Virus record (IMG/VR): IMGVR_UViG_3300046167_000825
Span: 124,001-188,000 of that record
Length of the DNA stretch: 64,000 nt
Direction: 5' to 3' (one strand)
The notes under the pieces are model-generated. The model was given only the letters and a program-made list of their open reading frames with translations, was not told the origin of the DNA and searched no databases. Positions 19,144 to 61,938 of the stretch are shown piece after piece; the stretch's first letter is position 1; every line of letters begins with the position of its first letter. The translations under genes were made by a program, and so were the position numbers.

Positions 19144-19174
19144 TATACGGAACTATTAAAAAAGTGCAACCGCA
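19144..19174 (-). promoter_or_regulatory. Class-I phage promoter motif
   Basis: TGCGGTTG-N16-CCGTATA. Confidence 0.8.
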
Positions 19175-19175
19175 C

Positions 19176-19580
19176 TCAAACAAAACGCATTGGGTCAGCC
19201 TCATAGAGTTGTTGGATTCCCGTGAGGGGGAAGTGATTGAGGGGCTTTGTCATGTCCTCTTCACTGTAAGCGACATAGGATGTGAGTTTATCACTCTCGC
19301 ATTTCATTATGGATTGGATGGGTGCAATGAAGGGATTCTCCCAGTCGAAGTTTCTTTTAATGCTGTCGAAGGTCGTGCTTCTCCATCTCTCACACAGAGC
19401 CATTGGAGATCGGAACGCCCCATTGAAGAACATTGCCGATCCCCCTTTGGTTTCTATGGTATCCACACCTTTTTTTACATAGGCGGGCATCCCTCGCTTA
19501 TGACATGATAATAGTGTCATGAGGTCATTCACTTGAACGGGTTTCAAGTCTTTTTTGGTGTCTTCACAGAGTTTAATCAT
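19176..19580 (-). CDS. Hypothetical protein
   Basis: AGGAGG SD; own promoter motif. Confidence 0.6.
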   Translation of the reverse strand: MIKLCEDTKKDLKPVQVNDLMTLLSCHKRGMPAYVKKGVDTIETKGGSAMFFNGAFRSPMALCERWRSTTFDSIKRNFDWENPFIAPIQSIMKCESDKLTSYVAYSEEDMTKPLNHFPLTGIQQLYEADPMRFV

Positions 19581-19608
19581 AGAGCCTCCTCGTTATCTCT
19601 TTGATAAC

Positions 19609-19639
19609 TATACGGATAGTGAGAGGTAAGACGATCCCA
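19609..19639 (-). promoter_or_regulatory. Variant promoter motif (GGGATCG upstream box)
   Basis: TGGGATCG-N16-CCGTATA. Confidence 0.65.
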
Positions 19640-19963
19640 ATGAAACTATCCATGAACATACTCAATGAAACACCCATTCGCCAACGGGGGTTAAGAACCC
19701 TCCGTGACGAAGTGAAGAAGAGGTTTCCCAATGTAATTCCAGAGGAAATCCTTCTGTTATTGATGGATCAACCCTCTATTTCCTTGATAGAGAAAATGGA
19801 TGACCTCATTGGGTATGTCGTCTTCAAAGAAAAGATTCTCATTGAGATCAACAAAGAACAACCACTAATCCTACATATCAATTACCACAAAGACCTATTG
19901 AACCTATCACAACCTCTCCAAGAAATATTGAAACAAAGGTTTGCGTTATTACTGGGAGGATAG
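19640..19963 (+). CDS. Hypothetical protein
   Basis: ORF ends 2 nt before the Nudix gene. Confidence 0.45.
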   Translation: MKLSMNILNETPIRQRGLRTLRDEVKKRFPNVIPEEILLLLMDQPSISLIEKMDDLIGYVVFKEKILIEINKEQPLILHINYHKDLLNLSQPLQEILKQRFALLLGG

Positions 19964-19965
19964 CA

Positions 19966-20343
19966 ATGGGTGCTGGCTGTATAATTATGAGGGACGACAA
20001 GATTCTTGTTCTCCAAAGAAAAGATGGGCGATTTGATTTACCGAAAGGACATCAAGAACCTACAGAAACTTTATTTGAATGTGCTCAACGAGAAACCTTC
20101 GAGGAATGTGGTCTGTGGTTTGAGTTCAACCAAGTTCAAGGATTGATTGAACATGAAGAACTCTCTTTGTATATTGTTAATTATACAACGGGGAAAGTCG
20201 CACTCAAGCCCAACCCCGAAACCAACGAACTAGAGCATGTTGATTACAAATGGATATCTCCATTTGTATTTGTTCTTCAATGCTTGCCCTATATGATTCC
20301 TCACATAAGAAAATATATCGGAGTGAAATATGCCTCTCATTAA
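19966..20343 (+). CDS. Nudix hydrolase (Ap4A hydrolase-like)
   Basis: LPKGHQEPTETLFECAQRETFEECG Nudix box. Confidence 0.88.
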   Translation: MGAGCIIMRDDKILVLQRKDGRFDLPKGHQEPTETLFECAQRETFEECGLWFEFNQVQGLIEHEELSLYIVNYTTGKVALKPNPETNELEHVDYKWISPFVFVLQCLPYMIPHIRKYIGVKYASH

Positions 20344-24798: not shown

Positions 24799-25782
24799 CT
24801 ATTCACAAACGATATCACCCCACACGGTTTCAGTGTTCTCATTCACCAAAGCCACCGATAACTCACCCCGTTGGAATACTTTCAACTCGCCAGAGCCAGT
24901 GGGGATACCCTCTGTCAAACAATCAGAGAATGTGTTTCGGATCTGAACACATTGGATTCCCTCACTGTCCTCGTAGCACATCACCTCGTCATTGTTATCG
25001 AACTGAACCAAGCCATTGATACCCTCAATGAGAACTTTTTGGTTTTCGTTCTCCCAACACTCAATGAAATCTGCACCAGAACCACAGAAGACACCTTGAC
25101 CTCTCACTGTATCGAAAACACGATTACTCTCGTAGTTCATCCAATAACCCAACTGAAAGTCGTCATCGAAACAAGCAACTGACTTGTCGCTTGAACGAAT
25201 ACCACAGACCTCGTGGTTGTTCGCTGAAATCATATCGTACTCACCCTCAACGACAAACGAGCGATTCAAATCATCCCAACAATCGACTGAACCATCAAAG
25301 CCCAAGCCACATAACAACTTGCGACCATTCGATACTTGTGAGTACTCAGTCTCGTCAATGTGATTAGCAGTCTTGCCGTCAAAGGCAGAGCAGTCACCCT
25401 CTCCGACACACTCACACTCAATCTTACTCTCACCGTTCAAACCACATACGAAACGAGTTTCCTCAACTTCTACGGTTGGCAACTGGATAAAATCGGCATA
25501 CCAACCGTGTGCCTCAGAAATCGAACTCCAACCAAAGTCAGAAGCATAGAGGAACTCAGCAGAACCATCTATGTTCGCAACGACATAAGGGTCTTCAACA
25601 ACGACTTCTTCTTCAATGACGGGTTCTTCCGAACTGTCCTCAACTACCGTTTCTTCTTCCTCAGAAACATCAACAAAGGTTTCCGACTCTGTTAAGACAT
25701 CGTAATCCCCAGCCAAGTTCTCACCAAGCCCCTTGTCGATTAACCCGTACTCCATACACCCAATGATAGCAAATAACAACAT
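24799..25782 (-). CDS. Putative lipoprotein with RCC1/BLIP-II-like beta-propeller repeats
   Basis: MLLFAIIG-C lipobox; repeats such as CGL..DGSVDCW and CGI.SSDKSVACF. Confidence 0.65.
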   Translation of the reverse strand: MLLFAIIGCMEYGLIDKGLGENLAGDYDVLTESETFVDVSEEEETVVEDSSEEPVIEEEVVVEDPYVVANIDGSAEFLYASDFGWSSISEAHGWYADFIQLPTVEVEETRFVCGLNGESKIECECVGEGDCSAFDGKTANHIDETEYSQVSNGRKLLCGLGFDGSVDCWDDLNRSFVVEGEYDMISANNHEVCGIRSSDKSVACFDDDFQLGYWMNYESNRVFDTVRGQGVFCGSGADFIECWENENQKVLIEGINGLVQFDNNDEVMCYEDSEGIQCVQIRNTFSDCLTEGIPTGSGELKVFQRGELSVALVNENTETVWGDIVCE

Positions 25783-25826: not shown

Positions 25827-25857
25827 TATACGGGTCTAATCAAATACTACAACCGCA
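25827..25857 (-). promoter_or_regulatory. Class-I phage promoter motif
   Basis: TGCGGTTG-N16-CCGTATA. Confidence 0.8.
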
Positions 25858-25861: not shown

Positions 25862-26980
25862 TCAATACAACCCACACCCAAAACCAGTCTTCAATAAAGA
25901 CTCCGTCCACAAACGCTCCGAACCACGAGCGTTCTCACGAAGATTAAACCAACCACTGGGAACTAAATAATTACGACCATTCAAATCCAACACCAAATCC
26001 GATAAAGGATTGACACCAACATAAGAACCCAACCAAGTACGAATGTACTGAACCAATATCTGCTTGTACTCAACATCCTTATCGAAACCCTCCCTCTTCA
26101 AACGATTCGATAAAACCCAACCCCTCCAAATATCACCAGTGGGTGTCCGATAACCCAACTCATTGACGGAAGCAGATAAAGGCTGCCAACCCAACCAACC
26201 ACCCGAAAGCAATAGACCACGAACTGCACCAAACAAACCCTCCCAATACTCATAATAAGAATCAGTCATGTTCCTCCAACCCATGTCATCCAGAAGATCA
26301 CTCAGTTCACGAGAACGAACCAAACCCAAATGGGCATACACACTCTCCTTCGTCTCAAATGAACCCAAATCAAGACCAGACAAAAGAACACGGAAAGACT
26401 CAGTCTTCTCTGAAGAAATCACGAGAGGAGATACAAACGACCAATCCCAAGAAGGATTCTTGTCCTTTATATAGGTCATAGTCTGACGAGTGATCTCCTT
26501 ACCATTCTTTGAACGGAAATCAAGAGCCTTCATCTCAACAACAACAGCATTGAATGAAGTACTACGACAATCCTCCACAATAGAACGATAAAGAGCATGG
26601 GCTTCCTTATGCCACGAAGGAACAGTGACACGATGCTTCTTACGAACTCGCACACCCTTCGTCCTCTTACCAAAGACCCTACTCCATGTAGCACTCGACC
26701 AAGCCTTACCAGTCTTAGTATAGAAACCACGACCATTCAAATAAGAAAAGTTATACTGACCAACAGCACCCATCTCTGAAAGATAATATGAATCGTCATA
26801 ACGACTCACCAAAATACCAGACAAAATACCACGACTCAAATCACAACGAGAATCACGGTATGCCTCCGAAACAGTGTAGTAATAACCCATAAGAACCAAC
26901 GACCTAAAACTATACCTCTCATAAATCTCACCCTCTGTAAGACCACCCTCAATGTATGACCAATAGTGTTCCATAAACAC
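25862..26980 (-). CDS. DNA-binding protein with about 4 serine-recombinase-type HTH (recombinase domain-like) repeats; no catalytic domain seen
   Basis: LNGRGFYTKTGKAWS, MKALDFRSKNGKEIT, VNELGYRTPTGDIWR, LNGRNYLVPSG...LWT; AGGAGG SD. Confidence 0.6.
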   Translation of the reverse strand: MFMEHYWSYIEGGLTEGEIYERYSFRSLVLMGYYYTVSEAYRDSRCDLSRGILSGILVSRYDDSYYLSEMGAVGQYNFSYLNGRGFYTKTGKAWSSATWSRVFGKRTKGVRVRKKHRVTVPSWHKEAHALYRSIVEDCRSTSFNAVVVEMKALDFRSKNGKEITRQTMTYIKDKNPSWDWSFVSPLVISSEKTESFRVLLSGLDLGSFETKESVYAHLGLVRSRELSDLLDDMGWRNMTDSYYEYWEGLFGAVRGLLLSGGWLGWQPLSASVNELGYRTPTGDIWRGWVLSNRLKREGFDKDVEYKQILVQYIRTWLGSYVGVNPLSDLVLDLNGRNYLVPSGWFNLRENARGSERLWTESLLKTGFGCGLY

Positions 26981-27598: not shown

Positions 27599-27605
27599 AA
27601 TCACC

Positions 27606-28063: not shown

Positions 28064-28094
28064 TATACGGGTCTTCCCTAGAGATACAACCGCA
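28064..28094 (-). promoter_or_regulatory. Class-I phage promoter motif
   Basis: TGCGGTTG-N16-CCGTATA; one of a divergent pair. Confidence 0.8.
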
Positions 28095-30215: not shown

Positions 30216-30246
30216 TGCAATTGACTCAACACTTCTTTTCCGTATA
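30216..30246 (+). promoter_or_regulatory. Variant class-I promoter motif
   Basis: TGCAATTG-N16-CCGTATA. Confidence 0.65.
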
Positions 30247-31268: not shown

Positions 31269-31277
31269 TGGTATAAT
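31269..31277 (+). promoter_or_regulatory. Host sigma70-type extended -10 (TGnTATAAT), probably giving a leaderless mRNA
   Basis: TGGTATAAT lies 5 nt before the sigma-factor ATG; no SD. Confidence 0.55.
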
Positions 31278-32814: not shown

Positions 32815-32845
32815 TATACGGATCTTCCGTAAAAATGCAACCGCA
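32815..32845 (-). promoter_or_regulatory. Class-I phage promoter motif
   Basis: TGCGGTTG-N16-CCGTATA. Confidence 0.8.
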
Positions 32846-33410: not shown

Positions 33411-33441
33411 TATACGGAAGTGTTCGCCAAAAGCGATCCCT
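33411..33441 (-). promoter_or_regulatory. Variant promoter motif (GGGATCG upstream box)
   Basis: AGGGATCG-N16-CCGTATA. Confidence 0.65.
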
Positions 33442-33931: not shown

Positions 33932-33962
33932 TATACGGAACTATTAAAAAAACGCAACCACA
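33932..33962 (-). promoter_or_regulatory. Class-I phage promoter motif
   Basis: TGTGGTTG-N16-CCGTATA. Confidence 0.75.
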
Positions 33963-34865: not shown

Positions 34866-34949
34866 AATGACCTCTTTGAATGATGAGGATATGGGGGATA
34901 ATAGAAATATCAAGCAACCCCCCCGTATGGTTATCTACTTGATAGTATA

Positions 34950-34980
34950 TATACGGGTCTCTTAAAAAACTGCAACCGCA
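34950..34980 (-). promoter_or_regulatory. Class-I phage promoter motif
   Basis: TGCGGTTG-N16-CCGTATA. Confidence 0.8.
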
Positions 34981-35464: not shown

Positions 35465-35495
35465 TATACGGATCTCTTAAAAAACTGCAACCACA
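35465..35495 (-). promoter_or_regulatory. Class-I phage promoter motif
   Basis: TGTGGTTG-N16-CCGTATA. Confidence 0.75.
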
Positions 35496-38782: not shown

Positions 38783-38813
38783 TATACGGAACTACTTAAA
38801 AAACGCAACCGCA
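38783..38813 (-). promoter_or_regulatory. Class-I phage promoter motif
   Basis: TGCGGTTG-N16-CCGTATA. Confidence 0.8.
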
Positions 38814-38929: not shown

Positions 38930-38960
38930 TGCGGTTGCATATATAAAGGAGATCCGTATA
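38930..38960 (+). promoter_or_regulatory. Class-I phage promoter motif
   Basis: TGCGGTTG-N16-CCGTATA. Confidence 0.8.
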
Positions 38961-40454: not shown

Positions 40455-40485
40455 TGCGGTTGCATATATAAAAGAGATCCGTATA
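40455..40485 (+). promoter_or_regulatory. Class-I phage promoter motif
   Basis: TGCGGTTG-N16-CCGTATA; near-identical to the 38930 cassette. Confidence 0.8.
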
Positions 40486-51876: not shown

Positions 51877-52212
51877 ATGTCAGATACAACCCCACAAAAG
51901 AGTGTCGAAATAAATTGGGAAGCCTCTGTGAAAGTCTTAATCGAGATGGTGCAGCATGAAGATTCTTGGTTTTCTAAGCACCAACCCTTAACGAATGAAG
52001 ATTATCAACAACTGTTGGCACTGCCTTCTGGAGGAATGACTCAAGTTTCCCACACCTTGTTGATGGAGGCTATAAAGAGGGAGGTCTATCTTTCTTTCTA
52101 TGCCCTCAAATCAAAAGAGGACTTGGAGGGGAGGGTTTATCAAGTGATGTCCGAAATCTTGAAGAGAGAGATACCCCGTGTGGTTGAGAACCTCAAGTTA
52201 GAGGGGTTGTAA
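51877..52212 (+). CDS. Hypothetical protein
   Basis: GAGG SD; clean ORF. Confidence 0.55.
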   Translation: MSDTTPQKSVEINWEASVKVLIEMVQHEDSWFSKHQPLTNEDYQQLLALPSGGMTQVSHTLLMEAIKREVYLSFYALKSKEDLEGRVYQVMSEILKREIPRVVENLKLEGL

Positions 52213-52232
52213 GGCAACCCCTTTTTCGTATA
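52202..52232 (+). promoter_or_regulatory. Variant class-I promoter motif
   Basis: AGGGGTTG-N16-TCGTATA. Confidence 0.5.
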
Positions 52233-53666: not shown

Positions 53667-53824
53667 TTTTTCTTTCCCTTCTGAGATACACGGAACTTTT
53701 CATAGAGTTCGACTCCCATTGCTTTTCTGAGATGAGATTCAAAATCTTCTCCTTTCGGCTGAGGGGCTTGGTATTTCTTCTTTGGTTTTTCTTCCAACCA
53801 CGAACTACCTCTTTCTATCTTCAT
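53663..53824 (-). CDS. 53-aa basic protein (not in the ORF track)
   Basis: AAGGAG SD; ATGA overlap with the next gene. Confidence 0.5.
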   Translation of the reverse strand: MKIERGSSWLEEKPKKKYQAPQPKGEDFESHLRKAMGVELYEKFRVSQKGKKK

Positions 53825-53907
53825 GGGTCTTCTCCTTTTGAACCAATATACCCCTTCAATAATCTTTCAATAGATTCGTATCAATGATAAACCTATAAGA
53901 GAATTAT

Positions 53908-56034
53908 ATGAAAACTTTTGAGTTATATGGTGATGTGTATCCAGAGGACAGCAAGTACTCTCGTTTGATGGCTCAGTACATAATGACACCGAACTACGAT
54001 TCCGACTCAAAAAAAGAGTGGGAACTGTATAGGGATTTCGCAGTCAAAAAACGAATGGGCGACAACGAGATGAAAGCGTTCTTGGTCGCCAAAGATTCTA
54101 GCCATCACAATATGATTCTCGGAAGACCTCCTAGAGATTCTCGTGACTTAGAACAAGTGTATTCTCGCCAGTTCGGAAAGAGTGCTTCTTCACGGGAAGA
54201 CGAAAAGGAACTGACGGAAATCTTTCGTTTGTTGCAGAGAAGGTTCGGTCAAGCGAGGCGTTGGCATGAGTCTGGTTTTGAGGATCAGTATTTCCACATT
54301 GACAACGGCATAATGTTCTTCGCATATACCACGGGGCTTCGTGGTGAAGATGCCGACAACTCTGATTTGGAAGGTGGAATCCGTAGAGATAACAAAGACG
54401 ATGTCCAACAGTTCTTGGAGAGAAAAGGGTACGAGTTTATCCTAGAATGTGCCAACGCATATTGCGACACTTTAATGTTGACCTTGAAAGGGAAAGAGTG
54501 GATGAAGAACAATCGACCACGATACGCCAAACAAGCAGAGGATGAGTGTTCGGGGATGACCAACACAATGGATTATGTTCATTGCCGAGCAAAGAAGATG
54601 GAAAAAGAAAATGGCACATCAGCCGACAAAGCGTTTCCGACAGCGTGGTCTATTGCTTGTAAATACAAGCGTGACCAGTTGAGCGATGCCGATGAACATT
54701 GTCAGAAAAAACCTAATGAATATTTCAAATCTAAAAAAGCAAATGGAGAACCCATGAAAAAGAAAGCGGCTAGAGTGCCTCAAATCCTAATTGAAACGAT
54801 AATGCCAGCCTTGTACCAATGGAGGGTTGACAAACTTTCTCGTGATCTTCGTAGTGATCTCAAAGAACTCGCCATAGGTGACATGATGGAAGAACTTGTT
54901 GTGAAAGATCACTATGATGAGTTGTTTGCACTCAAAGATAACTCAGAGGCTATGGCTTGGATTGGAGTAGATTCTAAGACCTACAAGAAAGCCATCATGC
55001 AAACTTTGATTGCTGCTCGTCAGATGAAGTTGGGTTCTTCCGAACTAGAACTTATGGCTGGACACACCCCAGAGTCCTTCAAGAAAATGATGAAAGACAA
55101 TCCCGAACTAGCCGAAGAATGGGAGAAGCAAATCAAAGAGAACGAAGGTGTTGTCGAGAAGAAATCTTCTGAAGCAGATATCGTTGCCAATTTGGTTGAG
55201 AAATGGGCTGGTTGTGAGAAACTCCCTAACGAGAAGATGCAGCAAATGTGCGAGGATAAGAAAGAAGAATCCAAGAAGGAAGACAAAGAGGATGGGGAAG
55301 ACAAGAAAGACAAGAAAGCCCATGACAAAACAGCCCGTCTGATGAAGCGACAGATCAAGATTCTTGAGACCTATCTTCGCACCCAAACTTCTATCCCTAT
55401 GTTTTTTGAGGCTCTTCCTCCGAAAATCCAACAAGCATTACAGCGAGTCAAGTACCAAGAAACTCTTGAGATGGATGTTGAGAGATGGTTGTCTGATTAC
55501 CGATTGGAGCAACAAATAAATCAAAACCGTTGGGCATCTAATGGCTCTACGAAGGAGAACCCCATGAACAAAGAAGCAAAAACTGCTTTGAGAACCCTTA
55601 CTGCTAGTTGGGGACTCACAGCCGATGAAACCTACGAGATGTTAGCCGAAGACGAACTAGGGGAGTACCTTGCCGAAATGGAAGCCGAAATGTGGGCTGA
55701 AGAAATGGAAGCGGGTGCATCAAAGAACCCAGCGAACGCTGGTTTCAAAAAGTATCAAATACAGAAGAAGCCCTCTGAGCCTTATTACCGAGAGAAATGG
55801 TGGAAGCCCAACACTTCTAACGAAGACAAAGGTGGGAACGGTGCTGGTGGTACTGCCAACTTCAATCGCAACTACCACGAGTATGGTGAGAAGGCTAATG
55901 TGAGCGAGAAGGAGTACCAAAAGTCCTATTACCAAAAACGCTTTGTGGAAAACAAGCCCATCAAGCGTAAGACTTGCCCTAAGTTTCATGGGAGAAAGGG
56001 GCCTTGTGATGAATCCGTAAGTAAGGCAAAGTAA
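53908..56034 (+). CDS. Modular polyprotein-like hypothetical protein (putative head-internal protein)
   Basis: Many K/R-x-A-delimited segments; two internal SD+ATG starts. Confidence 0.7.
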   Translation: MKTFELYGDVYPEDSKYSRLMAQYIMTPNYDSDSKKEWELYRDFAVKKRMGDNEMKAFLVAKDSSHHNMILGRPPRDSRDLEQVYSRQFGKSASSREDEKELTEIFRLLQRRFGQARRWHESGFEDQYFHIDNGIMFFAYTTGLRGEDADNSDLEGGIRRDNKDDVQQFLERKGYEFILECANAYCDTLMLTLKGKEWMKNNRPRYAKQAEDECSGMTNTMDYVHCRAKKMEKENGTSADKAFPTAWSIACKYKRDQLSDADEHCQKKPNEYFKSKKANGEPMKKKAARVPQILIETIMPALYQWRVDKLSRDLRSDLKELAIGDMMEELVVKDHYDELFALKDNSEAMAWIGVDSKTYKKAIMQTLIAARQMKLGSSELELMAGHTPESFKKMMKDNPELAEEWEKQIKENEGVVEKKSSEADIVANLVEKWAGCEKLPNEKMQQMCEDKKEESKKEDKEDGEDKKDKKAHDKTARLMKRQIKILETYLRTQTSIPMFFEALPPKIQQALQRVKYQETLEMDVERWLSDYRLEQQINQNRWASNGSTKENPMNKEAKTALRTLTASWGLTADETYEMLAEDELGEYLAEMEAEMWAEEMEAGASKNPANAGFKKYQIQKKPSEPYYREKWWKPNTSNEDKGGNGAGGTANFNRNYHEYGEKANVSEKEYQKSYYQKRFVENKPIKRKTCPKFHGRKGPCDESVSKAK

Positions 56035-56669
56035 TGAAGCGAGTTCGTCTTACACAAGTATGGCAAAAAGATATCACTGCTAGTTCGGGTCTTTATGGCT
56101 CGACTAAAGCAGTCGATAACTCTGTGCAAGCCAGTATCCGAAAGATACAACGCAAAGCCTCGAAGGTGGCTAAGGCTCTTTATAAGAGAGACCCCAAGTC
56201 ATCTGAGTTCCTTGCTATGCACGCCAAGAAAAGCAAATCGGCTTCTGCTCAGATTCTTGTTAATGCCATCAAGGAACTTGCTCCCAAGTTCGCAACCGAG
56301 ATGAACAAACAAGCCTCTTGGGGGATGTACGGATATCCTAAAAAGACAGTCACTCGTTCGTTGGGTGCTTGTGCTGAGATGAAGGATTTCGCTGGCTCTG
56401 TGGCTAGTGACCTCCATCGTAGGAAGCATGACAAGTATGATGCTTTGTTGTCCTACTTGAAATCCCATAAGAAGGAAACGAAGTGTCCTTGTACTTCAGC
56501 CCTTCTGAACTATTACCCTTCAAAAGAAATGCGTTTCGCTTCTGAAGAAGAACCCACTCTCCGTGAGTCTTTGATTCGATTGGCAAATGAAAAACCCCAT
56601 CTCCGAACTCATCTGAGTTCATTGATAGGGGAAGCACCGAACTGGCTTTATTGGTCAGACTGGGATTAA
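56034..56669 (+). CDS. Two-repeat helical protein with a C-terminal LIRLANEKPHLR tag
   Basis: Repeats start with GLYG and GMYG; TAATG coupling. Confidence 0.7.
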   Translation: MKRVRLTQVWQKDITASSGLYGSTKAVDNSVQASIRKIQRKASKVAKALYKRDPKSSEFLAMHAKKSKSASAQILVNAIKELAPKFATEMNKQASWGMYGYPKKTVTRSLGACAEMKDFAGSVASDLHRRKHDKYDALLSYLKSHKKETKCPCTSALLNYYPSKEMRFASEEEPTLRESLIRLANEKPHLRTHLSSLIGEAPNWLYWSDWD

Positions 56670-57112
56670 GTTCTCTTCCGTATGGGTTGCTTGACCAAAC
56701 GAACGGTTGCTTTTTTTTGTCGTTGTTCGACATTATTAAAGAGTGCCGTTTTTTGGCGTTCGGGTAGCCCCACAAGGGTTTCCTCAAACTTGGGTGTCGT
56801 CTGCAACTTGGCGTAGAACAATACATTGAACATTGAGCCGAGTTCTCGCTGGAGTGCTAGAAGGTCAGCATCTGATTTCAGAACCCAATTGGACTTGGAC
56901 TCAATCACATGGAAGTGTGCTGTGTCCGACACGGGCACTCGGCTCTCCTCATAGCCTCGTAGTTCGTCTTTGTATGTGTCGAGTATGGTCTTGATGCTAG
57001 ACTGGGCTTCCCACAAAGTATAGGCTATTTCCGAGCGTTCTCTGGTGGGTGTGTCATCCCATTGTTCTTGTATGGTGTTTATTAGTTGTTTGAGTATTCT
57101 GAGTTCTTGCAT
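56666..57112 (-). CDS. Hypothetical protein
   Basis: AAGGA SD. Confidence 0.6.
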   Translation of the reverse strand: MQELRILKQLINTIQEQWDDTPTRERSEIAYTLWEAQSSIKTILDTYKDELRGYEESRVPVSDTAHFHVIESKSNWVLKSDADLLALQRELGSMFNVLFYAKLQTTPKFEETLVGLPERQKTALFNNVEQRQKKATVRLVKQPIRKRT

Positions 57113-57195
57113 AGTCTGTTCCTTTGAGATTAAAGAATCTAGTTAAGTGTTTGAAGAACACCCCCTCAAAGTGAGGGGGGCTTACGGCTCTCGGC

Positions 57196-58089
57196 TTAGG
57201 AGAGGAGGTGGTACGGGATGCTCTCTCGGAAAACACGAGGTGTCGTTGGGAGGTCAGCGAAAACCCGACCAATATTCGTAATGTCACCGTTGCGATCAAT
57301 TATTTTCTTCCCTTGCATCAAGAGCATAAGTTGTGGGTCGGCATTGGGAACACGACCACCACCAATTAAAATCTTGAGGATTCCAAGACAGTCACGGTGA
57401 ATACTCGCCCAGTGGTCGATAGCAAGCCGAGCAACAACCATTTTCTCACGAGCGTTCCCCCGATTGATACCGAGTTCTTGGGCTAACTCCGTACTCGTCC
57501 AGCCGAATATTTCGGCTACGACAGCCTCTTTAGCATAAGGGATGGGCTTACCCCGTTTTTTGAAGAGGGCAGTCATCTCACCCATCAGTTCAAAGAGGGC
57601 TTCATGTTCCACTGGGTCAATCTCATCGGCTCTCTCTTCTATAGAAGAAGGGGTGGCTACTACAATAGTGGTAGCCTCTTCAACACCGACTGAACCCTCG
57701 TAGGCTTCACTGAGTGCCGAAGGTGGGGTTGCGTAGAACTTGACCATCTGACGGTCATCATCATTGGTGACTGCCCATTGCTGTGCTACATCCACATTGT
57801 GACGGATGTTCTTGTCAAGGCTGTCCAACATCGCATTAAATGCGAAGAGTGCAAGACGAGAGGCTGTGATTTCCTTGCCTTTGATTTCAACCACATCTCC
57901 GTTTTCATCTGTCGTTAAACGACACGCTAGTCTATCGGAGGAGGCAGCAACAAGATAGTAATCGTGAAGGATATCCGCTAGGTCTATCTTCCGAAAGTTG
58001 TGCTTCACTTTGACTTGAAGCCAATCGAGCGTGGATTTGTAGAGGGAGGAAAAGTTGGCTTGTAGCCATGTAGTAGACAAATTAGTCAT
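57196..58089 (-). CDS. Divergent sigma-like/HTH transcription factor
   Basis: DLADILHD...FAFNAMLDSL (region-2-like); GWTSTELAQELGINRGNAREKM..AR (region-4-like HTH). Confidence 0.5.
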   Translation of the reverse strand: MTNLSTTWLQANFSSLYKSTLDWLQVKVKHNFRKIDLADILHDYYLVAASSDRLACRLTTDENGDVVEIKGKEITASRLALFAFNAMLDSLDKNIRHNVDVAQQWAVTNDDDRQMVKFYATPPSALSEAYEGSVGVEEATTIVVATPSSIEERADEIDPVEHEALFELMGEMTALFKKRGKPIPYAKEAVVAEIFGWTSTELAQELGINRGNAREKMVVARLAIDHWASIHRDCLGILKILIGGGRVPNADPQLMLLMQGKKIIDRNGDITNIGRVFADLPTTPRVFRESIPYHLLS

Positions 58090-58228
58090 AGGGCGAGTAC
58101 CTTATTTTATGGGTTAGGGGTGACCGTAGTCAGAGAGATAAACGAGTACATTATCCAAAAGAGGACAATGATTTTTAATAATTCACACAAAGCGTAGTTG
58201 TGCTACTAGACTTAGTATAGCATATTTA

Positions 58229-58259
58229 CATACGGGTCACAAGCAAAAACGCAACCGCA
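58229..58259 (-). promoter_or_regulatory. Class-I phage promoter motif
   Basis: TGCGGTTG-N16-CCGTATG. Confidence 0.75.
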
Positions 58260-58358
58260 GAGCGTTATGGACAGATTTTGACCTCTCTCGAGAAAAGATT
58301 TGAACTCAATAATTCGTTTATCTTTGGTAGATTATGAAAAGCCTTATTGGAGATAACA

Positions 58359-59879
58359 ATGCGTACAATTAAAAAGATAGCGATGAACCGACAGATGAAG
58401 TTTCAAATGATCAATGACTTTGCAAAGTCTGTTGGTGTGATGGACTTAAGTCAATATGGCGATACTGCTGTGGGTATTTACAATGATCTTGTGACGGCTA
58501 TGTACTCCGTGATGGATGTGAAGGTACTTGAAAAAGATGACCTTGAGCAGATGTTAAATCTCTATCTCGCTGGGATAAACCCTTCGTCTTACTGGTCTGA
58601 GGGTAAATTGAAGCAGAGCCTTAGTGATGATAATGTCGATAAAGCCCAAGCGTTCTTGTCGGCTTTCTCTGACCGATCCACGGCTGTGTGGGCTTCCTTG
58701 TGGGGGTCACGGGATGCGTCATCCATAAAGGACATCAAAACAACTTTCGCTCAAATGAAGACAAGTCTCCGACAAAGAGCCAGAGATGAAATCCGACAAG
58801 AAAATGCCCGCCAAGAGGGCATGGTTCAAATGGATAATAGTGGTGACGACAGTGATTCAGCACAAGCCTACCAAAACGCAATGGAGGGGGAAATCTCTCG
58901 TTCGGTCGGTGTTGGGCAGACTTTCAACTTGAACTCTTGGGATGAGATCCAAGCCGCTGGGAATCGGGATGAGAAAGTGGGGCAAGCAGTGGCAGACATT
59001 GAGGCACTATTCTCAAGCAATATTTCCCAGATTGCTTTGGCTGTAATGGATATTGCTTTTGTAGGGGATAGAAAAACAGATGCTTTTGAGAGAAAACTTT
59101 TTGAAATAGCGAACTCCGTTGGTGATTACTCCGTAAAGGTCACGACATTGTTTGGGGATATAAACATCGATCAGAATATCACTATCGGTCGCCCCGTAGC
59201 CTTGAAGTCTAAGAACTGGCTAACCAATCTCACAGCCCATCTCGTTGTGACAAGATATCCCGCACTACGCTATTTGGTAGTTCCAGACAAGAAGGTCAAG
59301 AATCTTCCCGAAGGTGATTTCCGTGACCTACTAGACGGGAAACACACTCGACCCTTTTCAAACGCTTCTATTTCTCTGCCACAACACTTGAGTATCTCTG
59401 CAAGGGATATTGCTAGAAACTCAGATGCTCAAACCATCGTTGGTCGGTTCGACCCTTCTTCTGCTGATATTGAGAGTAAAGATGGTGTGATAGCAATGAC
59501 AAACAAGTCTTTCATAAAACTCATGAAAGCCGCTAGAGAGTCTTTGAACCAAAAATGGGTTTCTGGGAAAAGGTTGAGAAACAAGCCTTTCTGGAAAAAA
59601 GGAATGGATTGTCTTGTTCGTCAAGTTCAGATTGACTTTGAAACAGACCCTACCACATGGCTTGATTATGTAGAACTCCCGAGTAGTGTTTCAGCCGAAA
59701 CAAAAAGGTTCGTAGAAAACTTCCGTTTTTTACTAATCCGTGCGTTGGTTGACCTTGATGAAGCACACGGTTGGTACGAACTACGCAATAAGAGATTCGC
59801 TAAAAAGAAAGAAGCCAAACAACATCGTCTGGCTTCCAAAGTCGCTTACAAATGGTTGCTGAAACAATCTAAAGCATAA
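58359..59879 (+). CDS. Hypothetical protein (possible virion-packaged factor)
   Basis: GGAG SD; N-terminal KKIA; C-terminal RFA/KEA and RLASKVAYKWL. Confidence 0.65.
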   Translation: MRTIKKIAMNRQMKFQMINDFAKSVGVMDLSQYGDTAVGIYNDLVTAMYSVMDVKVLEKDDLEQMLNLYLAGINPSSYWSEGKLKQSLSDDNVDKAQAFLSAFSDRSTAVWASLWGSRDASSIKDIKTTFAQMKTSLRQRARDEIRQENARQEGMVQMDNSGDDSDSAQAYQNAMEGEISRSVGVGQTFNLNSWDEIQAAGNRDEKVGQAVADIEALFSSNISQIALAVMDIAFVGDRKTDAFERKLFEIANSVGDYSVKVTTLFGDINIDQNITIGRPVALKSKNWLTNLTAHLVVTRYPALRYLVVPDKKVKNLPEGDFRDLLDGKHTRPFSNASISLPQHLSISARDIARNSDAQTIVGRFDPSSADIESKDGVIAMTNKSFIKLMKAARESLNQKWVSGKRLRNKPFWKKGMDCLVRQVQIDFETDPTTWLDYVELPSSVSAETKRFVENFRFLLIRALVDLDEAHGWYELRNKRFAKKKEAKQHRLASKVAYKWLLKQSKA

Positions 59880-61044
59880 ACTGCTTGACCTTGACGGTCT
59901 GAATAGTTTTCTCTCTTCGGGGTAGATGTGCGTTGCACACTGCCCCTTTTCTTTTGCCTTGCACGAGGTATAGATAGCCCTCTCCACTCCGTCTAGGCTT
60001 CTTGGCTATAACTTCCATACCCACTTCAAGATTCGCTCTCAGAACCCACTTCTTGGCTTCACACGGCTGTCTTTCATATTGATAGGATTGAGTCCTAGTC
60101 ATGGATTGAGGGGCTTCTCTCAAAGAGTTGATTTGTTGGAGTGTTTCGGGTTCAACAAACAGTGTTTTTGTTCTTGTGAGATTTCGTTTTCTTTTCTTTG
60201 CTTGTTTGATTTGTTGCCTTGAATAGTTTGATGTTTCCTTGACGACTGTCTTGGGATTTTGGAGGCAAGTGAGGAGGTTGAGGTGCGTGAATAGAAAACG
60301 GTGACTGGTTTCTGTTTCTGTGAGAAACTTTTCCTCGAATACCACGTCCTCTTTGAACAACATAATTTTGCTCGCCCAAGCATACGCACTGTCTTGTGGG
60401 CGAGAGCCATCATATATGATTTTTCCGTTTCGGTCACAGAGGCAAAGGTGATATTCACAATAGACAAAGACACCTTCATTGAAGGTTAAGGCATGTCCTC
60501 TATGTAAGTTATTCAAGGCGATATTCGTCTTAACCCTCTGATTATGGATTTGTTGGAAACGCTTCGTTGAAGATAAAGGTGCTGCGAGGGTTTTACTGGT
60601 ATCCAGCCACATCAAAACTGATATCACCTCGTCTGAATGTCGTAGTGCATGGGGAGAGAAGGGTTTGAAAGCCACTGGGTGTTCTTTCAAGTCGAACCGA
60701 TAGGGAAACACTTCCACCCCACCTTGTTTCTTTCGGTACTCCAAGCCGTTCGTTTGCAAACTTTCTAGGAGAGTGGGTTCGATGTCATACAAGACAGAAG
60801 ACTCAATCTTCCAGTGATTAAACAGCACACTAGCGTGATACTGGTAAAGCATTTCAGAGAACCTTATCCCCTCTTGTCTGAACTTGGGTAGATTGTCAAG
60901 CCATAGTGGATAAGGAATCCCAGATTGAACAACCTTCGCCAACGTGTCCATAAAACCGTTTGACTTGTAATAACCTACGAGGGACTTTTTGAAGAAGTCT
61001 TTGAGGTGGGCGATTTGATTGGTGGTTGATAGGGCTAGTTTCAT
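59869..61044 (-). CDS. Hypothetical protein with a basic C-terminus
   Basis: AAGGAG SD; own promoter motif. Confidence 0.65.
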   Translation of the reverse strand: MKLALSTTNQIAHLKDFFKKSLVGYYKSNGFMDTLAKVVQSGIPYPLWLDNLPKFRQEGIRFSEMLYQYHASVLFNHWKIESSVLYDIEPTLLESLQTNGLEYRKKQGGVEVFPYRFDLKEHPVAFKPFSPHALRHSDEVISVLMWLDTSKTLAAPLSSTKRFQQIHNQRVKTNIALNNLHRGHALTFNEGVFVYCEYHLCLCDRNGKIIYDGSRPQDSAYAWASKIMLFKEDVVFEEKFLTETETSHRFLFTHLNLLTCLQNPKTVVKETSNYSRQQIKQAKKRKRNLTRTKTLFVEPETLQQINSLREAPQSMTRTQSYQYERQPCEAKKWVLRANLEVGMEVIAKKPRRSGEGYLYLVQGKRKGAVCNAHLPRREKTIQTVKVKQFML

Positions 61045-61067
61045 TTGTATGCTCCTTTGCTGAGAGG

Positions 61068-61098
61068 TATACGGAAAGCCCTCAAAAAAACAACCCGA
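61068..61098 (-). promoter_or_regulatory. Variant class-I promoter motif
   Basis: TCGGGTTG-N16-CCGTATA. Confidence 0.65.
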
Positions 61099-61159
61099 GT
61101 CAAGAATCTGATGTCACCTCAAAAAAGAGGGAGGGTTCTAATGAACCCCCCAGAGTGAC

Positions 61160-61384
61160 TTACTGAACTGCCCACCACCCATAGCCCTCGTTCTTCAAAG
61201 TGAGGATAGCGAACTCACCCACCTCGTTGAAGAAGTCCGTGTGCTTCTTGTCATAGCCCCCACGATACTTTCTCATAGCAATGAGATCGAGAGGACTGAT
61301 TTGAATCTCCTCCTCTGTCGGTTTGCGACCGTAATAGGTCACTTCCATTTCGTTACACATGTCTTGATCGATATAAATACGCAT
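61160..61384 (-). CDS. Small hypothetical protein
   Basis: AAGGAG SD before MRIYID. Confidence 0.55.
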   Translation of the reverse strand: MRIYIDQDMCNEMEVTYYGRKPTEEEIQISPLDLIAMRKYRGGYDKKHTDFFNEVGEFAILTLKNEGYGWWAVQ

Positions 61385-61403
61385 TGTCATTCTCCTTGAT
61401 TGT

Positions 61404-61877
61404 TTATTTTTTCCAGCAGAGAGCAGAACAGCACTCTTTGCCTTTTTTGGTGATAAAGTTCCTTGCCCCACAAGACTTACAGAAGGTAGGGTTTGTGTGA
61501 GCAGTACGGGCTTCTCCGTAAGCCGAACGCATACGCTCTAGCATACGGTCTGGGATGGCTTGAACGCCTCCCACACGATTGATACGCTTGCGTTTGATAA
61601 TGCCTCGTGTTGAACCGTCAGCGAACTTGCGAACGCCACAAACCCGAATGGCATCCTCTCCGACAATTCTCATTTCATTGGAGCGAATATCAATGGATGT
61701 GTAAACCAAAACACGAACATCTGAGTTCGGGATGGCACGAGAAAACACCCTCTCTTTGCAGAGGGGTTGATGTTGTGCTGTTTCGTCAGTGAAACCAGCA
61801 GTTTTGAGTTTGTGGAGCAACGAACCAGCGAGAGTGGAACGGTGGTGTTGATCACGAGGATTGTATTTGATAGGCAT
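61404..61877 (-). CDS. Phage hypothetical protein with a C-terminal Zn ribbon
   Basis: VYTSI...R.VGEDAIRV...RINRVG; CKSCGA...CSALCW; GGAGG SD. Confidence 0.7.
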   Translation of the reverse strand: MPIKYNPRDQHHRSTLAGSLLHKLKTAGFTDETAQHQPLCKERVFSRAIPNSDVRVLVYTSIDIRSNEMRIVGEDAIRVCGVRKFADGSTRGIIKRKRINRVGGVQAIPDRMLERMRSAYGEARTAHTNPTFCKSCGARNFITKKGKECCSALCWKK

Positions 61878-61907
61878 ATGCCCTCCCAAGTTATTGATTG
61901 TGGGAGG

Positions 61908-61938
61908 TATACGGGTCTATTCTAAAAACACAACCGCA
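61908..61938 (-). promoter_or_regulatory. Class-I phage promoter motif
   Basis: TGCGGTTG-N16-CCGTATA. Confidence 0.8.

What the first reader, a model, noticed from the sequence alone, without database searches (positions are those of the whole stretch)
19144..61938. Twenty-two copies of a non-canonical bipartite promoter forming one-gene-one-cassette arrays
Seen: TGCGGTTG-N16-CCGTATA or a variant, with an invariant 16-bp spacer, at 19144, 19609, 25827, 26993, 28064, 28127, 29675, 30216, 32815, 33411, 33932, 34950, 35465, 36312, 37315, 38783, 38930, 40455, 52202, 58229, 61068 and 61908. Every copy points into the next gene, and many are followed by a CAAT-repeat leader and an AGGAG SD. Upstream-box classes are GCGGTTG/GTGGTTG, GCAATTG and GGGATCG. 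It does not match the sigma70, sigma28, sigma32 or sigma54 consensus; the CGTA core recalls ECF -10 boxes. Known analogue: PeSL promoter/stem-loop cassettes that shuffle genes in T4-like phages. Inference: a phage-specific regulon whose repeats may also act as recombination substrates.
Basis: partly seen in the sequence, partly recalled or inferred. Interest (0 to 1): 0.68.

Follow-up and report, generated by a model that had tools for sequence, protein, structure and literature searches.

The report
Phage-specific promoter cassettes, marine jumbo phage
An uncultured marine jumbo phage puts one rigid two-box promoter, unlike the standard bacterial one, in front of about fifty of its early and DNA-replication genes; one of the phage's own sigma factors most likely reads it, and the repeated promoter copies have served as crossover points that swap, add and remove single-gene cassettes between related phages.

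Summary
All 22 copies are at the stated coordinates, 16 of them on the minus strand. Each sits 18-44 nt upstream of a Shine-Dalgarno (SD) site plus start codon on its own strand; two have long leaders (84 and 139 nt).

The window is part of a 289-kb viral record (CheckV 66% complete). That record holds about 48 such sites. The spacer is rigid: 49 matches at one spacing, 0-2 at any other.

The motif is G(C/G)G(G/A)T(T/C)G-N16-(T)CCGTATA.

The motif drives DNA polymerase, helicases and many small genes of unknown function. It is absent from the structural modules. It is kept, with lineage-specific -35 flavours, in related marine metagenome contigs. Sigma70-consensus sites are not enriched.

No RNA polymerase gene was found. 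The record has two clear sigma genes and two sigma-like ones. The 207-aa protein at 31283-31906 is the best candidate reader: it has invariant DNA-reading helices and its own TGGTATAAT promoter. It resembles sigma32/RpoS, not ECF sigmas.

A relative of about 83% identity shows cassette swaps, indels and replacements with junctions in or beside promoter cores. This supports the PeSL-like recombination idea. No transcription start sites could be mapped.

Verdict: a new variant of known kinds.

The parts
19144..19174 (-). Promoter, class A (TGCGGTTG-N16-CCGTATA), drives 72-aa ORF 18887-19105
   Evidence: leader 38 nt
19609..19639 (-). Promoter, class B (TGGGATCG), drives 134-aa ORF 19176-19580
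   Evidence: leader 28 nt; hairpin upstream (-17 kcal/mol)
25827..25857 (-). Promoter, class A, drives 327-aa ORF 24799-25782
   Evidence: orthologous promoters in L081, L084 and L087
26993..27023 (-). Promoter, class B (GGGGATCG), drives 370-aa ORF 25862-26974
   Evidence: the orthologue in L109 reads GGGGGTTG
28064..28094 (-). Promoter, class A, divergent partner of 28127; drives 75-aa ORF 27805-28032
   Evidence: the block downstream of it is replaced in L107 and L109
28127..28157 (+). Promoter, class A, drives 174-aa ORF 28196-28720
   Evidence: identical core in L107
29675..29705 (+). Promoter variant TGCAATTG...CCCGTAGA, drives 154-aa ORF 29735-30199 (AAA_33 family in relatives)
   Evidence: the orthologue in L107 has CCGTATA
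30216..30246 (+). Promoter variant TGCAATTG, drives 110-aa ORF 30273-30605
   Evidence: in L109 the orthologous site carries a TGCGGTTGCG-type promoter, i.e. the promoter was replaced
31269..31277 (+). TGGTATAAT, a canonical extended -10 located 5 nt before the ATG of the sigma gene; candidate host-type early promoter, possibly giving a leaderless mRNA
   Evidence: GGTATAAT or GGTATAGT at the same place in L084 and L081
31283..31906 (+). s1: 207-aa two-domain sigma70-family factor, the best candidate reader of the motif
   Evidence: Pfam Sigma70_r2 1.7e-11; TIGR02937 65 bits and RpoH/RpoS models; invariant region 2.4 and 4.2 helices in 15 homologues; best fold hit sigma32 8hkc_E
32815..32845 (-). 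Promoter, class A, drives 194-aa ORF 32188-32772
   Evidence: conserved in every relative next to s1
33411..33441 (-). Promoter, class B (AGGGATCG), drives 105-aa ORF 33070-33387
   Evidence: L107 has one extra gene between promoter and ORF
33932..33962 (-). Promoter, class A (TGTGGTTG), drives 149-aa ORF 33444-33893; this whole cassette is absent in L107
   Evidence: hairpin upstream (-21.6 kcal/mol)
34950..34980 (-). Promoter, class A, followed by a conserved structured 84-nt leader, then ORFs 34467-34865 and 34004-34429
34866..34949 (-). Conserved structured 5' leader: hairpin ATCAAGTAG...TTGCTTGAT plus a second helix that covers the SD and start codon
   Evidence: 5 lineages, near-invariant sequence; no Rfam family
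35465..35495 (-). Promoter, class A, drives 145-aa WGR-domain ORF 34991-35428; a junction of the cassette swap against L107
36312..36342 (-). Promoter, class A, drives 103-aa ORF 35959-36270; a junction of the cassette swap against L107
37315..37345 (-). Promoter, class A, drives 278-aa ORF 36435-37271
38783..38813 (-). Promoter, class A, divergent partner of 38930; drives the AAA_5 (CobS-like) ATPase 37484-38740
38930..38960 (+). Promoter, class A, drives 444-aa ORF 39005-40339
40455..40485 (+). Promoter, class A, drives the VWA (CobT-like) protein 40528-41910
52202..52232 (+). Promoter variant (AGGGGTTG...TTCGTATA); its -35 box is the 5' arm of the hairpin GGGGTTG-TAAGG-CAACCCC followed by a T-run; drives 61-aa ORF 52262-52447
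58229..58259 (-). Promoter variant with weakened -10 (CCCGTATG) and a 139-nt conserved leader; drives the 297-aa sigma-like protein
57196..58089 (-). sX: 297-aa protein of two helical domains plus a linker; weakly sigma-like (ECF-like fold); a member of the motif regulon in three lineages
   Evidence: Pfam r4_2 only at E 0.05; Atlas feature hits to sigma clusters at 0.92; fold hits to Mtb SigH/SigL, AlgU and SigE at E 0.02-0.4, below threshold
61068..61098 (-). Promoter variant (TCGGGTTG), drives 391-aa ORF 59869-61044
61908..61938 (-). Promoter, class A, drives 157-aa ORF 61404-61877
   Evidence: orthologous promoters in L090, L111 and L089

Best explanation
The repeats are the promoters of the phage's own early-to-middle regulon.

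Recognition (inferred):
- Host core RNA polymerase carrying a phage-encoded sigma70-family factor binds a -35 box G(C/G)G(G/A)T(T/C)G and an extended -10 box (T)TCCGTATA held exactly 16 bp apart.
- Transcription would start a few bases after TATA, giving short leaders of 18-44 nt that run into an AGGAG ribosome site.
- The most likely reader is the 207-aa two-domain sigma at 31283-31906. It has its own host-type TGGTATAAT promoter, so host sigma70 would make it first and it would then switch on the roughly 50 motif promoters.

What the regulon contains: DNA polymerase, helicases, nucleases, many small genes of unknown function, a sigma-like 297-aa protein, and the operon holding a double-sigma4 protein and a NusG-like protein. 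Structural genes use other signals, including a TCTATAT(T/A) element.

Class A: the TGCGGTTG(C/T) sub-family is a portable expression module. It comprises, in many copies, an upstream hairpin, then the promoter, a CAATCAA-type leader and the SD. It has been copied and homogenised within the genome. Homologous exchange between its copies has swapped, inserted, deleted and replaced single-gene cassettes between related phages.

Shown here: the anatomy, the regulon content, conservation in relatives, and cassette junctions at promoter cores.

Inferred only: that transcription starts there, and which sigma reads the motif.
For: Promoter:
- 49 sites at one spacing against 0-2 at other spacings.
- About 48 of 52 relaxed matches lie 15-45 nt upstream of SD + start on the same strand.
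- The boxes are conserved while the spacers vary.
- The same architecture occurs in seven relatives whose s1 is 50-60% identical.

Phage-specific, not host primary sigma:
- Sigma70-consensus scan of window 25-45 kb finds 24 sites against 23.5 expected.
- No motif between 12.8 and 68.3 kb, the module with tail sheath and baseplate genes.
- Motif genes include DNA polymerase, two helicases and an SbcD-like nuclease.
- No RNA polymerase catalytic subunit or T7-type polymerase was detected.

Sigma genes: s1 and s2 carry region 2.

Arguments for s1:
- Its region 2.4 and 4.2 helices are invariant across lineages that keep CCGTATA and the GRTYG core.
- It has its own TGGTATAAT or GGTATAAT promoter.
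- Its model has two domains, and the best fold hit is sigma32.

One recogniser for all box types: orthologous promoters read TGGGATCG, TGGGGTTG, ACGGGTCG or AGCGGTCT in different lineages, and GGGGATCG against GGGGGTTG.

Recombination:
- In L107, two cassettes are swapped with junctions inside the promoter cores. One cassette including its promoter is absent, and two blocks are replaced between conserved promoter and terminator flanks.
- Paralogous spacers match at 15-16 of 16 positions, while orthologous spacers match at 8-14 of 16.
- Inversions and moves of single cassettes are seen among L081, L084 and L087.
Against: - No transcription start site or expression data: no RNA run holds the sequence.
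- The host is unknown, so a host alternative sigma cannot be excluded.
- Three other sigma-like proteins exist. s2 has a lineage-variable region 4.2 helix. The 57196 protein is itself preceded by the motif, which would fit an autoregulated ECF-type sigma.
- In G000 the s1 gene also lies downstream of motif promoters in the same orientation (30216).
- The record is only 66% complete, so a polymerase or further factors may be missing.
- Breakpoints are expected to fall in intergenic DNA anyway, through selection.
- No cassette-level joints were seen in four metagenome runs over window 31900-37899.
- The hairpin-plus-promoter composite holds for only about 40% of sites.
Confidence: 0.65

Rival explanations
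1. The motif is read by the 297-aa sigma-like protein at 57196-58089, acting as an ECF-type sigma that activates its own gene. The 207-aa sigma would serve another promoter class, for example the TCTATAT or late class.
For: - Its best fold matches are all ECF sigmas: Mtb SigH/SigL, AlgU and SigE.
- Language-model feature hits fall on sigma clusters.
- Its gene is preceded by a motif-type promoter in three lineages. Autoregulation is typical of ECF sigmas (my own knowledge).
- The CGTATA -10 equals the B. subtilis SigW -10 as I recall it.
- Its C-terminal helix-turn-helix (HTH) region varies between lineages, as the class-A -35 flavours do.
Against: - All matches are below threshold: fold E 0.02-0.4, Pfam r4_2 E 0.05.
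- The protein is only 30-44% identical between lineages, with no invariant residue in the HTH region. Yet CCGTATA, the spacer and the GRTYG core are invariant.
- The -35 box has no AAC motif.
- Its own promoter copies are the weakest variants: CGTATG and CGTACC.
Confidence: 0.13
2. The motif is read by the 250-aa group-1-like phage sigma s2 (record 191237-191989, outside the window). Its region 4.2 would track the lineage-specific -35 flavours.
For: - s2 has regions 1.2, 2 and 4 and is the strongest sigma match (137 bits to the cyanobacterial RpoD model).
- Its region 4.2 helix differs between lineages: SRPQVYQT, SRTQVHQI, SRSQVCQI and SRAQVCQT.
- Its operon has its own conserved non-motif promoter, so it could be made first.
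Against: - Its -10-reading residues are almost those of primary sigmas (FSTYAIWWVRQS). That predicts a TATAAT-like -10 with a conserved T at -7, which the motif lacks.
- The helix variants do not map cleanly onto box variants: the C-type helix goes with both GCGGTTGAG and GCGGTTGC.
Confidence: 0.1
3. Host RNA polymerase holoenzyme reads the sites. Either a host alternative sigma does so directly, or host sigma70 reads TATA while a phage activator bound to the upstream box replaces -35 contacts, as in T4 MotA/AsiA sigma appropriation.
For: - TTG(C/A)nn-N16-TATAnn can be read into class-A copies.
- The -10 resembles sigma32-type CCCCATnT (my own knowledge).
- The genes served are early or middle genes, as with T4 middle promoters.
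- The lineage-specific upstream boxes would fit a fast-evolving activator.
Against: - Class-B boxes (GGGATCG) have no TTG, yet occupy orthologous positions to GGGGTTG boxes.
- The invariant CCG before TATA and the lack of a conserved T at -7 do not fit sigma70.
- There is no enrichment of sigma70-type sites.
- The phage carries two clear sigma genes and two sigma-like ones, which would then lack an obvious target.
Confidence: 0.09
4. The repeats are not promoters. They would be recombination or mobility sites, or RNA-level signals, that happen to lie between genes.
For: Cassette junctions fall in them.
Against: - Strict co-orientation with the downstream gene at all sites, at a fixed distance to the SD.
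- Two boxes with a rigid but unconserved spacer.
- No complementarity between the boxes.
- They also stand before conserved core genes such as the DNA polymerase.
Confidence: 0.03

Closest known systems
PeSL (promoter-early stem-loop) cassettes of T4-like phages (Arbiol et al. 2010, PMC2839356; Comeau et al. 2014, PMC4122927)
   Same: - A short conserved promoter-containing module is repeated between small non-essential genes in a plastic genome region.
- Indels, replacements and reshuffling between related phages have their junctions at the modules.
- Many copies have a terminator-like hairpin just upstream.
   Different: - PeSL promoters are strong sigma70-like early promoters. Here the promoter is a non-sigma70 motif, most likely read by a phage sigma, and it also serves core replication genes.
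- The hairpin is present at only about 40% of sites genome-wide.
- Mini-circles were neither testable nor seen.
- The phage is an unrelated, uncultured marine jumbo phage.
Phage-encoded sigma cascades with their own promoter consensus (Bacillus phage SPO1 gp28 and gp33/34; T4 gp55 late promoters; phiEco32 gp36), from my own knowledge
   Same: - A phage sigma redirects host core polymerase to a phage-specific consensus.
- There are several promoter classes in one genome: the motif, a TCTATAT class, and TGnTATAAT.
- The sigma gene itself lies behind a host-type promoter.
   Different: - The consensus sequence is different.
- Two clear sigma genes and two sigma-like genes sit in one genome.
- The sigma is a two-domain protein with an RpoH/RpoS-like region 2 and no region 3 domain.
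- No experimental data exist.
E. coli sigma32 promoters (CTTGAA-N13-15-CCCCATnT), and B. subtilis SigW/ECF promoters (TGAAAC-N16-CGTATA), consensus from my own knowledge
   Same: - Extended C-rich -10 (CC..ATA) and a rigid spacer.
- L081 and L084 copies read GTTGAGA-N12-14-CCGTATA, which is close to the sigma32 layout.
- The CGTATA core equals the SigW -10.
- The best solved-structure match of s1 is sigma32.
   Different: - The -35 box lacks both CTTGAAA in most copies and the ECF AAC motif.
- s1 scores far below the RpoH model cut-offs (60 vs 323 bits).
- s1 has no ECF hits in sequence or fold searches.
T4 middle promoters (MotA box plus sigma70 -10; sigma appropriation), from my own knowledge
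   Same: - A phage-specific upstream box replaces the canonical -35 at a fixed distance from the -10.
- The promoters serve replication-type genes.
   Different: - The -10 here is not TAnnnT with free flanks but TCCGTATA.
- No MotA or AsiA search was made.
- Phage sigmas are present.

Membership tests
Sigma70-family bipartite promoter (generic) | Two conserved boxes about 35 and 10 bp upstream of the start, with a narrow spacer range | tested here: met
   49 sites at one spacing, 0-2 at others; boxes conserved, spacer free
Sigma70-family bipartite promoter (generic) | Upstream of, and co-oriented with, transcription units | tested here: met
   All 22 window sites and about 48 record sites precede SD + start on the same strand
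Sigma70-family bipartite promoter (generic) | Transcripts start 5-10 nt downstream of the -10 box | not testable with these tools
   No RNA runs hold the sequence; only assembled contigs could be laid
Host primary-sigma (sigma70 consensus) promoter | TTGACA-N16-18-TATAAT, with A at -11 and T at -7 | tested here: not met
   Consensus scan finds 24 vs 23.5 expected in window 25-45 kb; no conserved T at -7, invariant CCG before TATA, class-B boxes lack TTG
ECF (group 4) sigma promoter and regulon | -35 box with an AAC core | tested here: not met
   -35 is G(C/G)G(G/A)T(T/C)G in all lineages
ECF (group 4) sigma promoter and regulon | -10 box with a CGT core | tested here: met
   CCGTATA is invariant
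ECF (group 4) sigma promoter and regulon | A cognate two-domain ECF sigma, usually autoregulated | tested here: inconclusive
   s1 has two domains but is RpoH/RpoS/SigA-like, with no ECF hits. The 57196 protein has sub-threshold ECF fold hits and a motif-type promoter
Sigma32-type promoter | CTTGAAA-N13-15-CCCCATnT | tested here: not met
   Only partial likeness: CCnnATA in the -10, and GTTGAGA in the L081 and L084 lineages. G000 boxes read GCGGTTGC or GGGATCG
PeSL cassettes | Composite of a stem-loop terminator and a promoter in one conserved module | tested here: inconclusive
   A hairpin of -10 kcal/mol or stronger within 70 nt upstream at 40% of 48 sites vs 27% of random 70-mers, p = 0.06; 7 of 8 sites in the 33.9-40.5 kb array; terminator-like sites 40 vs 19 expected
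PeSL cassettes | The promoter is a strong sigma70-like early promoter | tested here: not met
   Non-sigma70 consensus
PeSL cassettes | Concentrated in hyperplastic regions of small genes of unknown function | tested here: met
   Class A is dense in window 28-41 kb, with roughly one promoter per gene and mostly no family hits
PeSL cassettes | Indels and replacements between related phages are bounded by the modules | tested here: met
   G000 vs L107 and L109: cassette swap with junctions inside promoter cores, cassette presence or absence, block replacements; concerted evolution of spacers
PeSL cassettes | Mini-circles formed by exchange between nearby modules | not testable with these tools
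   Only assembled contigs were available; no joints found in 4 runs
T4 MotA-type middle promoter | MotA and AsiA homologues, and a sigma70 -10 TAnnnT | not tested
   No search for MotA or AsiA was made; the -10 does not fit TAnnnT

The most novel reading that the evidence does not exclude
A cosmopolitan lineage of uncultured marine jumbo phages runs a multi-sigma programme with two clear sigma factors and two sigma-like proteins. In this reading, a minimal two-domain sigma, RpoH/RpoS-like and lacking region 3, reads a previously undescribed rigid-spacer promoter. The promoter-leader module doubles as the homology that moves, inverts and replaces single-gene cassettes. That would be a PeSL-like shuffling system built on a phage-sigma promoter rather than a host-sigma70 promoter, with lineage-specific -35 dialects.
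Probability: 0.35. Interest if true: 0.65.

Novelty: new variant of a known kind. Interest (0 to 1): 0.55.

Why it matters
- **Regulatory map without a host.** The work gives a nearly complete, sequence-defined map for a widespread marine jumbo phage that has no cultured host: about 50 early/middle promoters, a candidate late element and a host-type promoter. The region occurs in runs from 21 studies.
- **Testable pairs.** It names concrete sigma-promoter pairs that can be tested in vitro or in E. coli reporters.
- **Generality of promoter-mediated shuffling.** It extends the idea of promoter-mediated modular shuffling (PeSLs) beyond T4-like phages and beyond host-type promoters. Repeated expression signals may therefore be a general engine of gene-cassette turnover in large phages.
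- **Possible tools.** The rigid, orthogonal promoter and its small sigma are also of the kind used as orthogonal expression parts.

Tried and rejected
- **Exact class-A motif in IMG/VR.** 64 single chance hits. The only related contig (IMGVR_UViG_3300021085_000024) carries two sites that are letter-for-letter the same as two G000 sites. The motif search therefore did not find relatives.
- **Peptide-pattern search for s1 in viral contigs.** Nothing found. Relatives came from the word-index protein search instead.
- **Nucleotide search against GenBank phages.** One irrelevant methyltransferase hit.
- **RNA evidence.** No RNA run holds the sequence, so no start sites could be mapped.
- **Metagenome contigs from four runs laid on window 31900-37899.** No cassette-level joints. 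The 'loose ends' at promoters proved to be cross-mapped paralogous promoter copies, and contig breaks at repeats. I do not count them as recombination.
- **Co-variation of sigma helices with the -35 dialects.** The s1 and s3 helices are invariant. The s2 helix varies but does not map cleanly onto box variants.
Rejected on one genome, LR745208.1, which has s3 but neither the motif nor a region-2 sigma.
- **Phage RNA polymerase.** No match to Rpb2_6, Rpb1_2 or the T7-type family. The control for the T7 family rang nowhere, so that negative is weak. The 3376-aa ORF has no Pfam or PHROG hit, so an N4-like virion polymerase is not excluded.
- **Host inference from the GroEL-like gene.** The best genome hit is only 35% identical, which is uninformative.
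- **'Moraphage' lineage (PMC12619734).** Considered as the home clade. No link could be made. Those phages are predicted to infect Bacteroidota, whereas this phage uses strong SD sites.
- **Rfam scan of the window.** No family found.
- **Access to metagenome records.** The contigs behind L081, L084 and L087 are not held for whole-record searches.

Full report
**1. What the window is**

The window is bases 124001-188000 of a 289,014-bp IMG/VR virus record (linear, CheckV 66% complete). GC content is 45.6%.
- The record has tail-sheath and baseplate genes, a DNA polymerase and helicases, a GroEL-like chaperonin and a CobS/CobT-like pair. It is a myovirus-type jumbo phage.
- The same DNA is held by marine and seawater metagenome runs from 21 studies.
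- Homologues of its proteins lie on Tara and other ocean contigs of up to 302 kb.
- No cultured relative exists in GenBank phages. The host is unknown.

**2. The observation**

All 22 coordinates carry the motif.
- With up to three mismatches the pattern is found 24 times. The expectation is 2.2, and 0 of 100 shuffles reach 24. The two extra hits are genic chance matches.
- In the whole record, G[GA]T[TC]G-N17-CGTATA occurs 49 times at exactly this spacing and 0-2 times at any other spacing from 12 to 20. The 'invariant spacer' is therefore real and striking.
- All 22 window copies are followed on the same strand by an SD and a start codon. The leader is 18-44 nt in 20 cases, 84 nt at 34950 and 139 nt at 58229.
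- Across the record, about 48 of 52 relaxed matches have this anatomy.
- The consensus is a.tG(c/g)G(g/a)T(t/c)G..ttt.......ttTCCGTATA.

**3. Classes**

- Class A, TG(C/T)GGTTG(C/T): 21 sites in the record. It has a T-rich, partly conserved spacer and a CAATCA-type leader in 17 of 21 sites. Median distance to the start codon is 37.5 nt.
- The other 27 sites read GGGATCG, AGGATCG, GGGGTTG, GGGGTCG and similar. They have shorter leaders (median 28 nt), and only 2 carry a CAATCA leader.
- The classes are not discrete. The orthologous promoter in front of the 367-aa gene after s2 reads TGGGATCG (this phage), TGGGGTTG (L088), ACGGGTCG (L089) and AGCGGTCT (L090).
- The orthologue of 26993 (GGGGATCG) reads GGGGGTTG in L109, with the spacer kept.
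- The simplest reading is one recogniser with a tolerant -35 core GRTYG.

**4. It is a promoter, and a phage-specific one**

- The two boxes are conserved while the 16-bp spacer is free. There is no complementarity between the boxes. Orientation always follows the gene.
- Relatives keep CCGTATA and the spacing but show lineage-specific -35 dialects:
  - GCGGTTGAG in L081 and L088;
  - GTCCGTTGAGAA in L084 and L112;
  - GCGGTTCGT in L087, L090 and L111.
- In this phage the motif precedes the DNA polymerase, two helicases, an SbcD-like nuclease and many small genes without family hits.
- The motif is absent from the 55-kb structural module at 13-68 kb and from the large-gene block at 110-143 kb.
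- Sigma70-consensus sites are not enriched in the cassette region: 24 found vs 23.5 expected.
- A perfect extended -10, TGGTATAAT, sits 5 nt before the ATG of the sigma gene at 31283. GGTATAAT and GGTATAGT stand at the same place in L084 and L081. The host-type signal therefore looks canonical and differs from the motif.
- A third element, (T)CTATAT(T/A), is enriched 9-13 fold in upstream regions that lack the motif. It sits 26-42 nt before many large genes. It is a candidate late class.

**5. Who reads it**

No RNA polymerase catalytic subunit was detected, with two caveats: the record is incomplete, and the T7-family control was silent. There are two clear sigma genes and two sigma-like ones.

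- **s1 (31283-31906, 207 aa).**
  - Family matches: Sigma70_r2. It passes the general sigma70 model TIGR02937 (65 bits). The next-best models are RpoH and RpoS, far below their cut-offs.
  - Structure: the model has two helical domains joined by a disordered linker at 103-138. The best solved-structure match is E. coli sigma32, then SigA and RpoS; no ECF sigma appears.
  - Conservation: the region 2.4 segment and the 4.2 helix (VSKQRCQQI) are invariant in 15 homologues that are only 50-60% identical overall. This matches the invariance of CCGTATA and of the -35 core.
- **s2 (record 191237-191989, 250 aa).**
  - It is group-1-like, with regions 1.2, 2 and 4.
  - Its -10-reading residues are nearly those of primary sigmas. 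Its 4.2 helix varies by lineage but does not track box variants cleanly.
  - Its operon has its own conserved TTGAGA-N16-TAAATA-like upstream sequence.
- **s3 (202 aa).**
  - It consists of two sigma4-like helix-turn-helix units and lies next to a NusG-like gene.
  - It belongs to a very large family: 939 hits, invariant helices.
- The one GenBank phage that has it, LR745208.1 (485 kb), has neither a region-2 sigma nor the motif.
- **The 57196-58089 protein (297 aa).**
  - Pfam gives only a sub-threshold region-4 hit (E 0.05).
  - Language-model features and the fold point weakly to sigma factors. The fold hits are ECF sigmas at E 0.02-0.4.
  - It evolves fast: 30-44% identity between lineages and no invariant residue in the helix-turn-helix part.
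  - In three lineages its gene lies behind a motif-type promoter with a weakened -10 and a conserved leader of about 140 nt.

The proposed order is host sigma70, then TGGTATAAT, then s1, then the motif regulon. The 57196 protein and s2 are rivals. This assignment is inference.

**6. Likeness to known consensus sequences (from my own knowledge)**

- The -10 shares CC..ATA with the sigma32 box CCCCATnT.
- In the L081 and L084 lineages the layout GTTGAGA-N12-14-CCGTATA comes close to CTTGAAA-N13-15-CCCCATnT.
- CGTATA also equals the SigW -10, but the -35 lacks the ECF AAC core.
- The best sigma candidate is not an ECF sigma.

**7. Recombination**

*Distant relatives.* Among G000, L081, L084 and L087, single cassettes or small blocks are inverted or moved. 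In G000 the s1 gene and its neighbour are inverted as a pair.

*The close relative L107.* L107 is about 83% identical at the nucleotide level and syntenic with window 27.0-40.0 kb. It differs by five cassette-level events in 13 kb:
- the block 27358-28038 is replaced between a conserved promoter-leader and a conserved terminator region;
- L107 has an extra gene behind promoter 33411;
- the whole cassette 33492-33953, promoter 33932 included, is missing in L107;
- the block 34087-34835 is replaced;
- the cassettes 34982-35465 and 35495-36312 are in the opposite order.

For the swapped pair, the flanks upstream and downstream of the three promoter cores are recombined. The junctions therefore lie inside the 31-bp cores.

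*Spacer comparison.* The three neighbouring promoters 34950, 35465 and 36312 share 15-16 of 16 spacer positions in this phage. They share only 14, 8 and 11 positions with their L107 orthologues. In L109 the orthologue of 30216 carries a different promoter type. This is concerted evolution or promoter replacement.

*Negative result.* Laying contigs of four metagenome runs on 31900-37899 showed no cassette joints. It showed only small indels and cross-mapped paralogous promoters.

*The composite stem-loop.* A hairpin upstream of the promoter is common in the 33.9-40.5 kb array (7 of 8 sites). Over all sites it is only marginally enriched (40% vs 27%, p = 0.06).

*Overall.* The system works like PeSLs (PMC2839356, PMC4122927), but it fails the PeSL criterion of a sigma70-like early promoter.

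**8. Verdict**

- The finding is real and its interpretation is largely right.
- It is a new promoter consensus for a probable phage-sigma regulon, combined with PeSL-like modular shuffling, in an uncultured but widespread marine jumbo phage.

Noticed in passing
whole record; window examples 29664(+), 33977(-), 36367(+), 37398(+), 40403(-), 61109(-): The 9-mer AGATTCTTG occurs 108 times in 289 kb, against about 2 expected, equally on both strands. 79 copies are genic and 29 intergenic. It is the most frequent 9-mer of the genome. It is also frequent in relatives (18 copies in 20 kb of L081, 21 in L084) and absent from 40 kb of LR745208.1. Several copies sit just 5' of a -35 box or inside the hairpins before promoters. 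CGAACTAGA (54 copies) is a second such word. Their role is unknown.
   Followed up: partly
window 8206-8216(+), 44434-44444(+), upstream of 9897 and 17861; many sites in the record: A second intergenic element, (T)CTATAT(T/A), is enriched 9-13 fold in upstream regions that lack the main motif. It lies 26-42 nt before the start codons of many large genes. It is a candidate third, late promoter class made of a -10 box only.
   Followed up: partly
window 34866-34949(-): An 84-nt leader behind promoter 34950 is almost invariant in five lineages whose proteins are only 50-60% identical. It folds into a hairpin (ATCAAGTAG...TTGCTTGAT) and a second helix that covers the SD and start codon. It looks like a translational control element or a small RNA. 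It has no Rfam match.
   Followed up: partly
window 31269-31285(+): TGGTATAAT lies only 5 nt before the ATG of the sigma gene, and there is no SD. A start at the usual distance would give a leaderless mRNA beginning at AUG. In L084 the same -10 is followed by a 26-nt leader with an SD.
   Followed up: no
L012:1360-1968 (record 236702-237310) and L012:830-1363: A 202-aa protein made of two sigma-region-4-like helix-turn-helix units, without region 2, lies next to a NusG-like gene and after a clamp-loader-like gene. It has 939 homologues with invariant helices and an invariant NLNILREVQRP tail, on contigs of up to 436 kb. It is a core transcription factor of a large group of huge phages, of unknown role.
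   Followed up: partly
record 189640-189700 and orthologous places in L088, L089, L090: The operon that holds the group-1-like sigma s2 has a conserved upstream sequence, TTGAGA-actaTTGAgtaat-N3-TAAATAagt, in four lineages. This is yet another promoter type.
   Followed up: no
window 58090-58228(-): The 139-nt leader of the 297-aa sigma-like gene carries a conserved block, GACTACGGTC(A/G)C...TAACCCA...TAAGG, just before the start codon in three lineages. It also has a TATACT-like hexamer shortly after the motif's -10.
   Followed up: no
window 52202-52226(+); record 228135: In some copies the -35 box (GGGGTTG) is the 5' arm of a hairpin followed by a T-run. One sequence could then serve as terminator for the upstream gene and as promoter for the next.
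   Followed up: no
record 51021-61151(-) (L095:6021-16151): A 3376-aa ORF has no Pfam or PHROG match at all. Its size recalls virion RNA polymerases of N4-like phages or giant structural proteins.
   Followed up: partly
window 37484-38740(-), 40528-41910(+), 47258-48796(+): An AAA_5 (CobS-like) ATPase and a VWA (CobT-like) protein, each with its own class-A promoter, and a GroEL-family chaperonin only 35% identical to the nearest genome hit.
   Followed up: no
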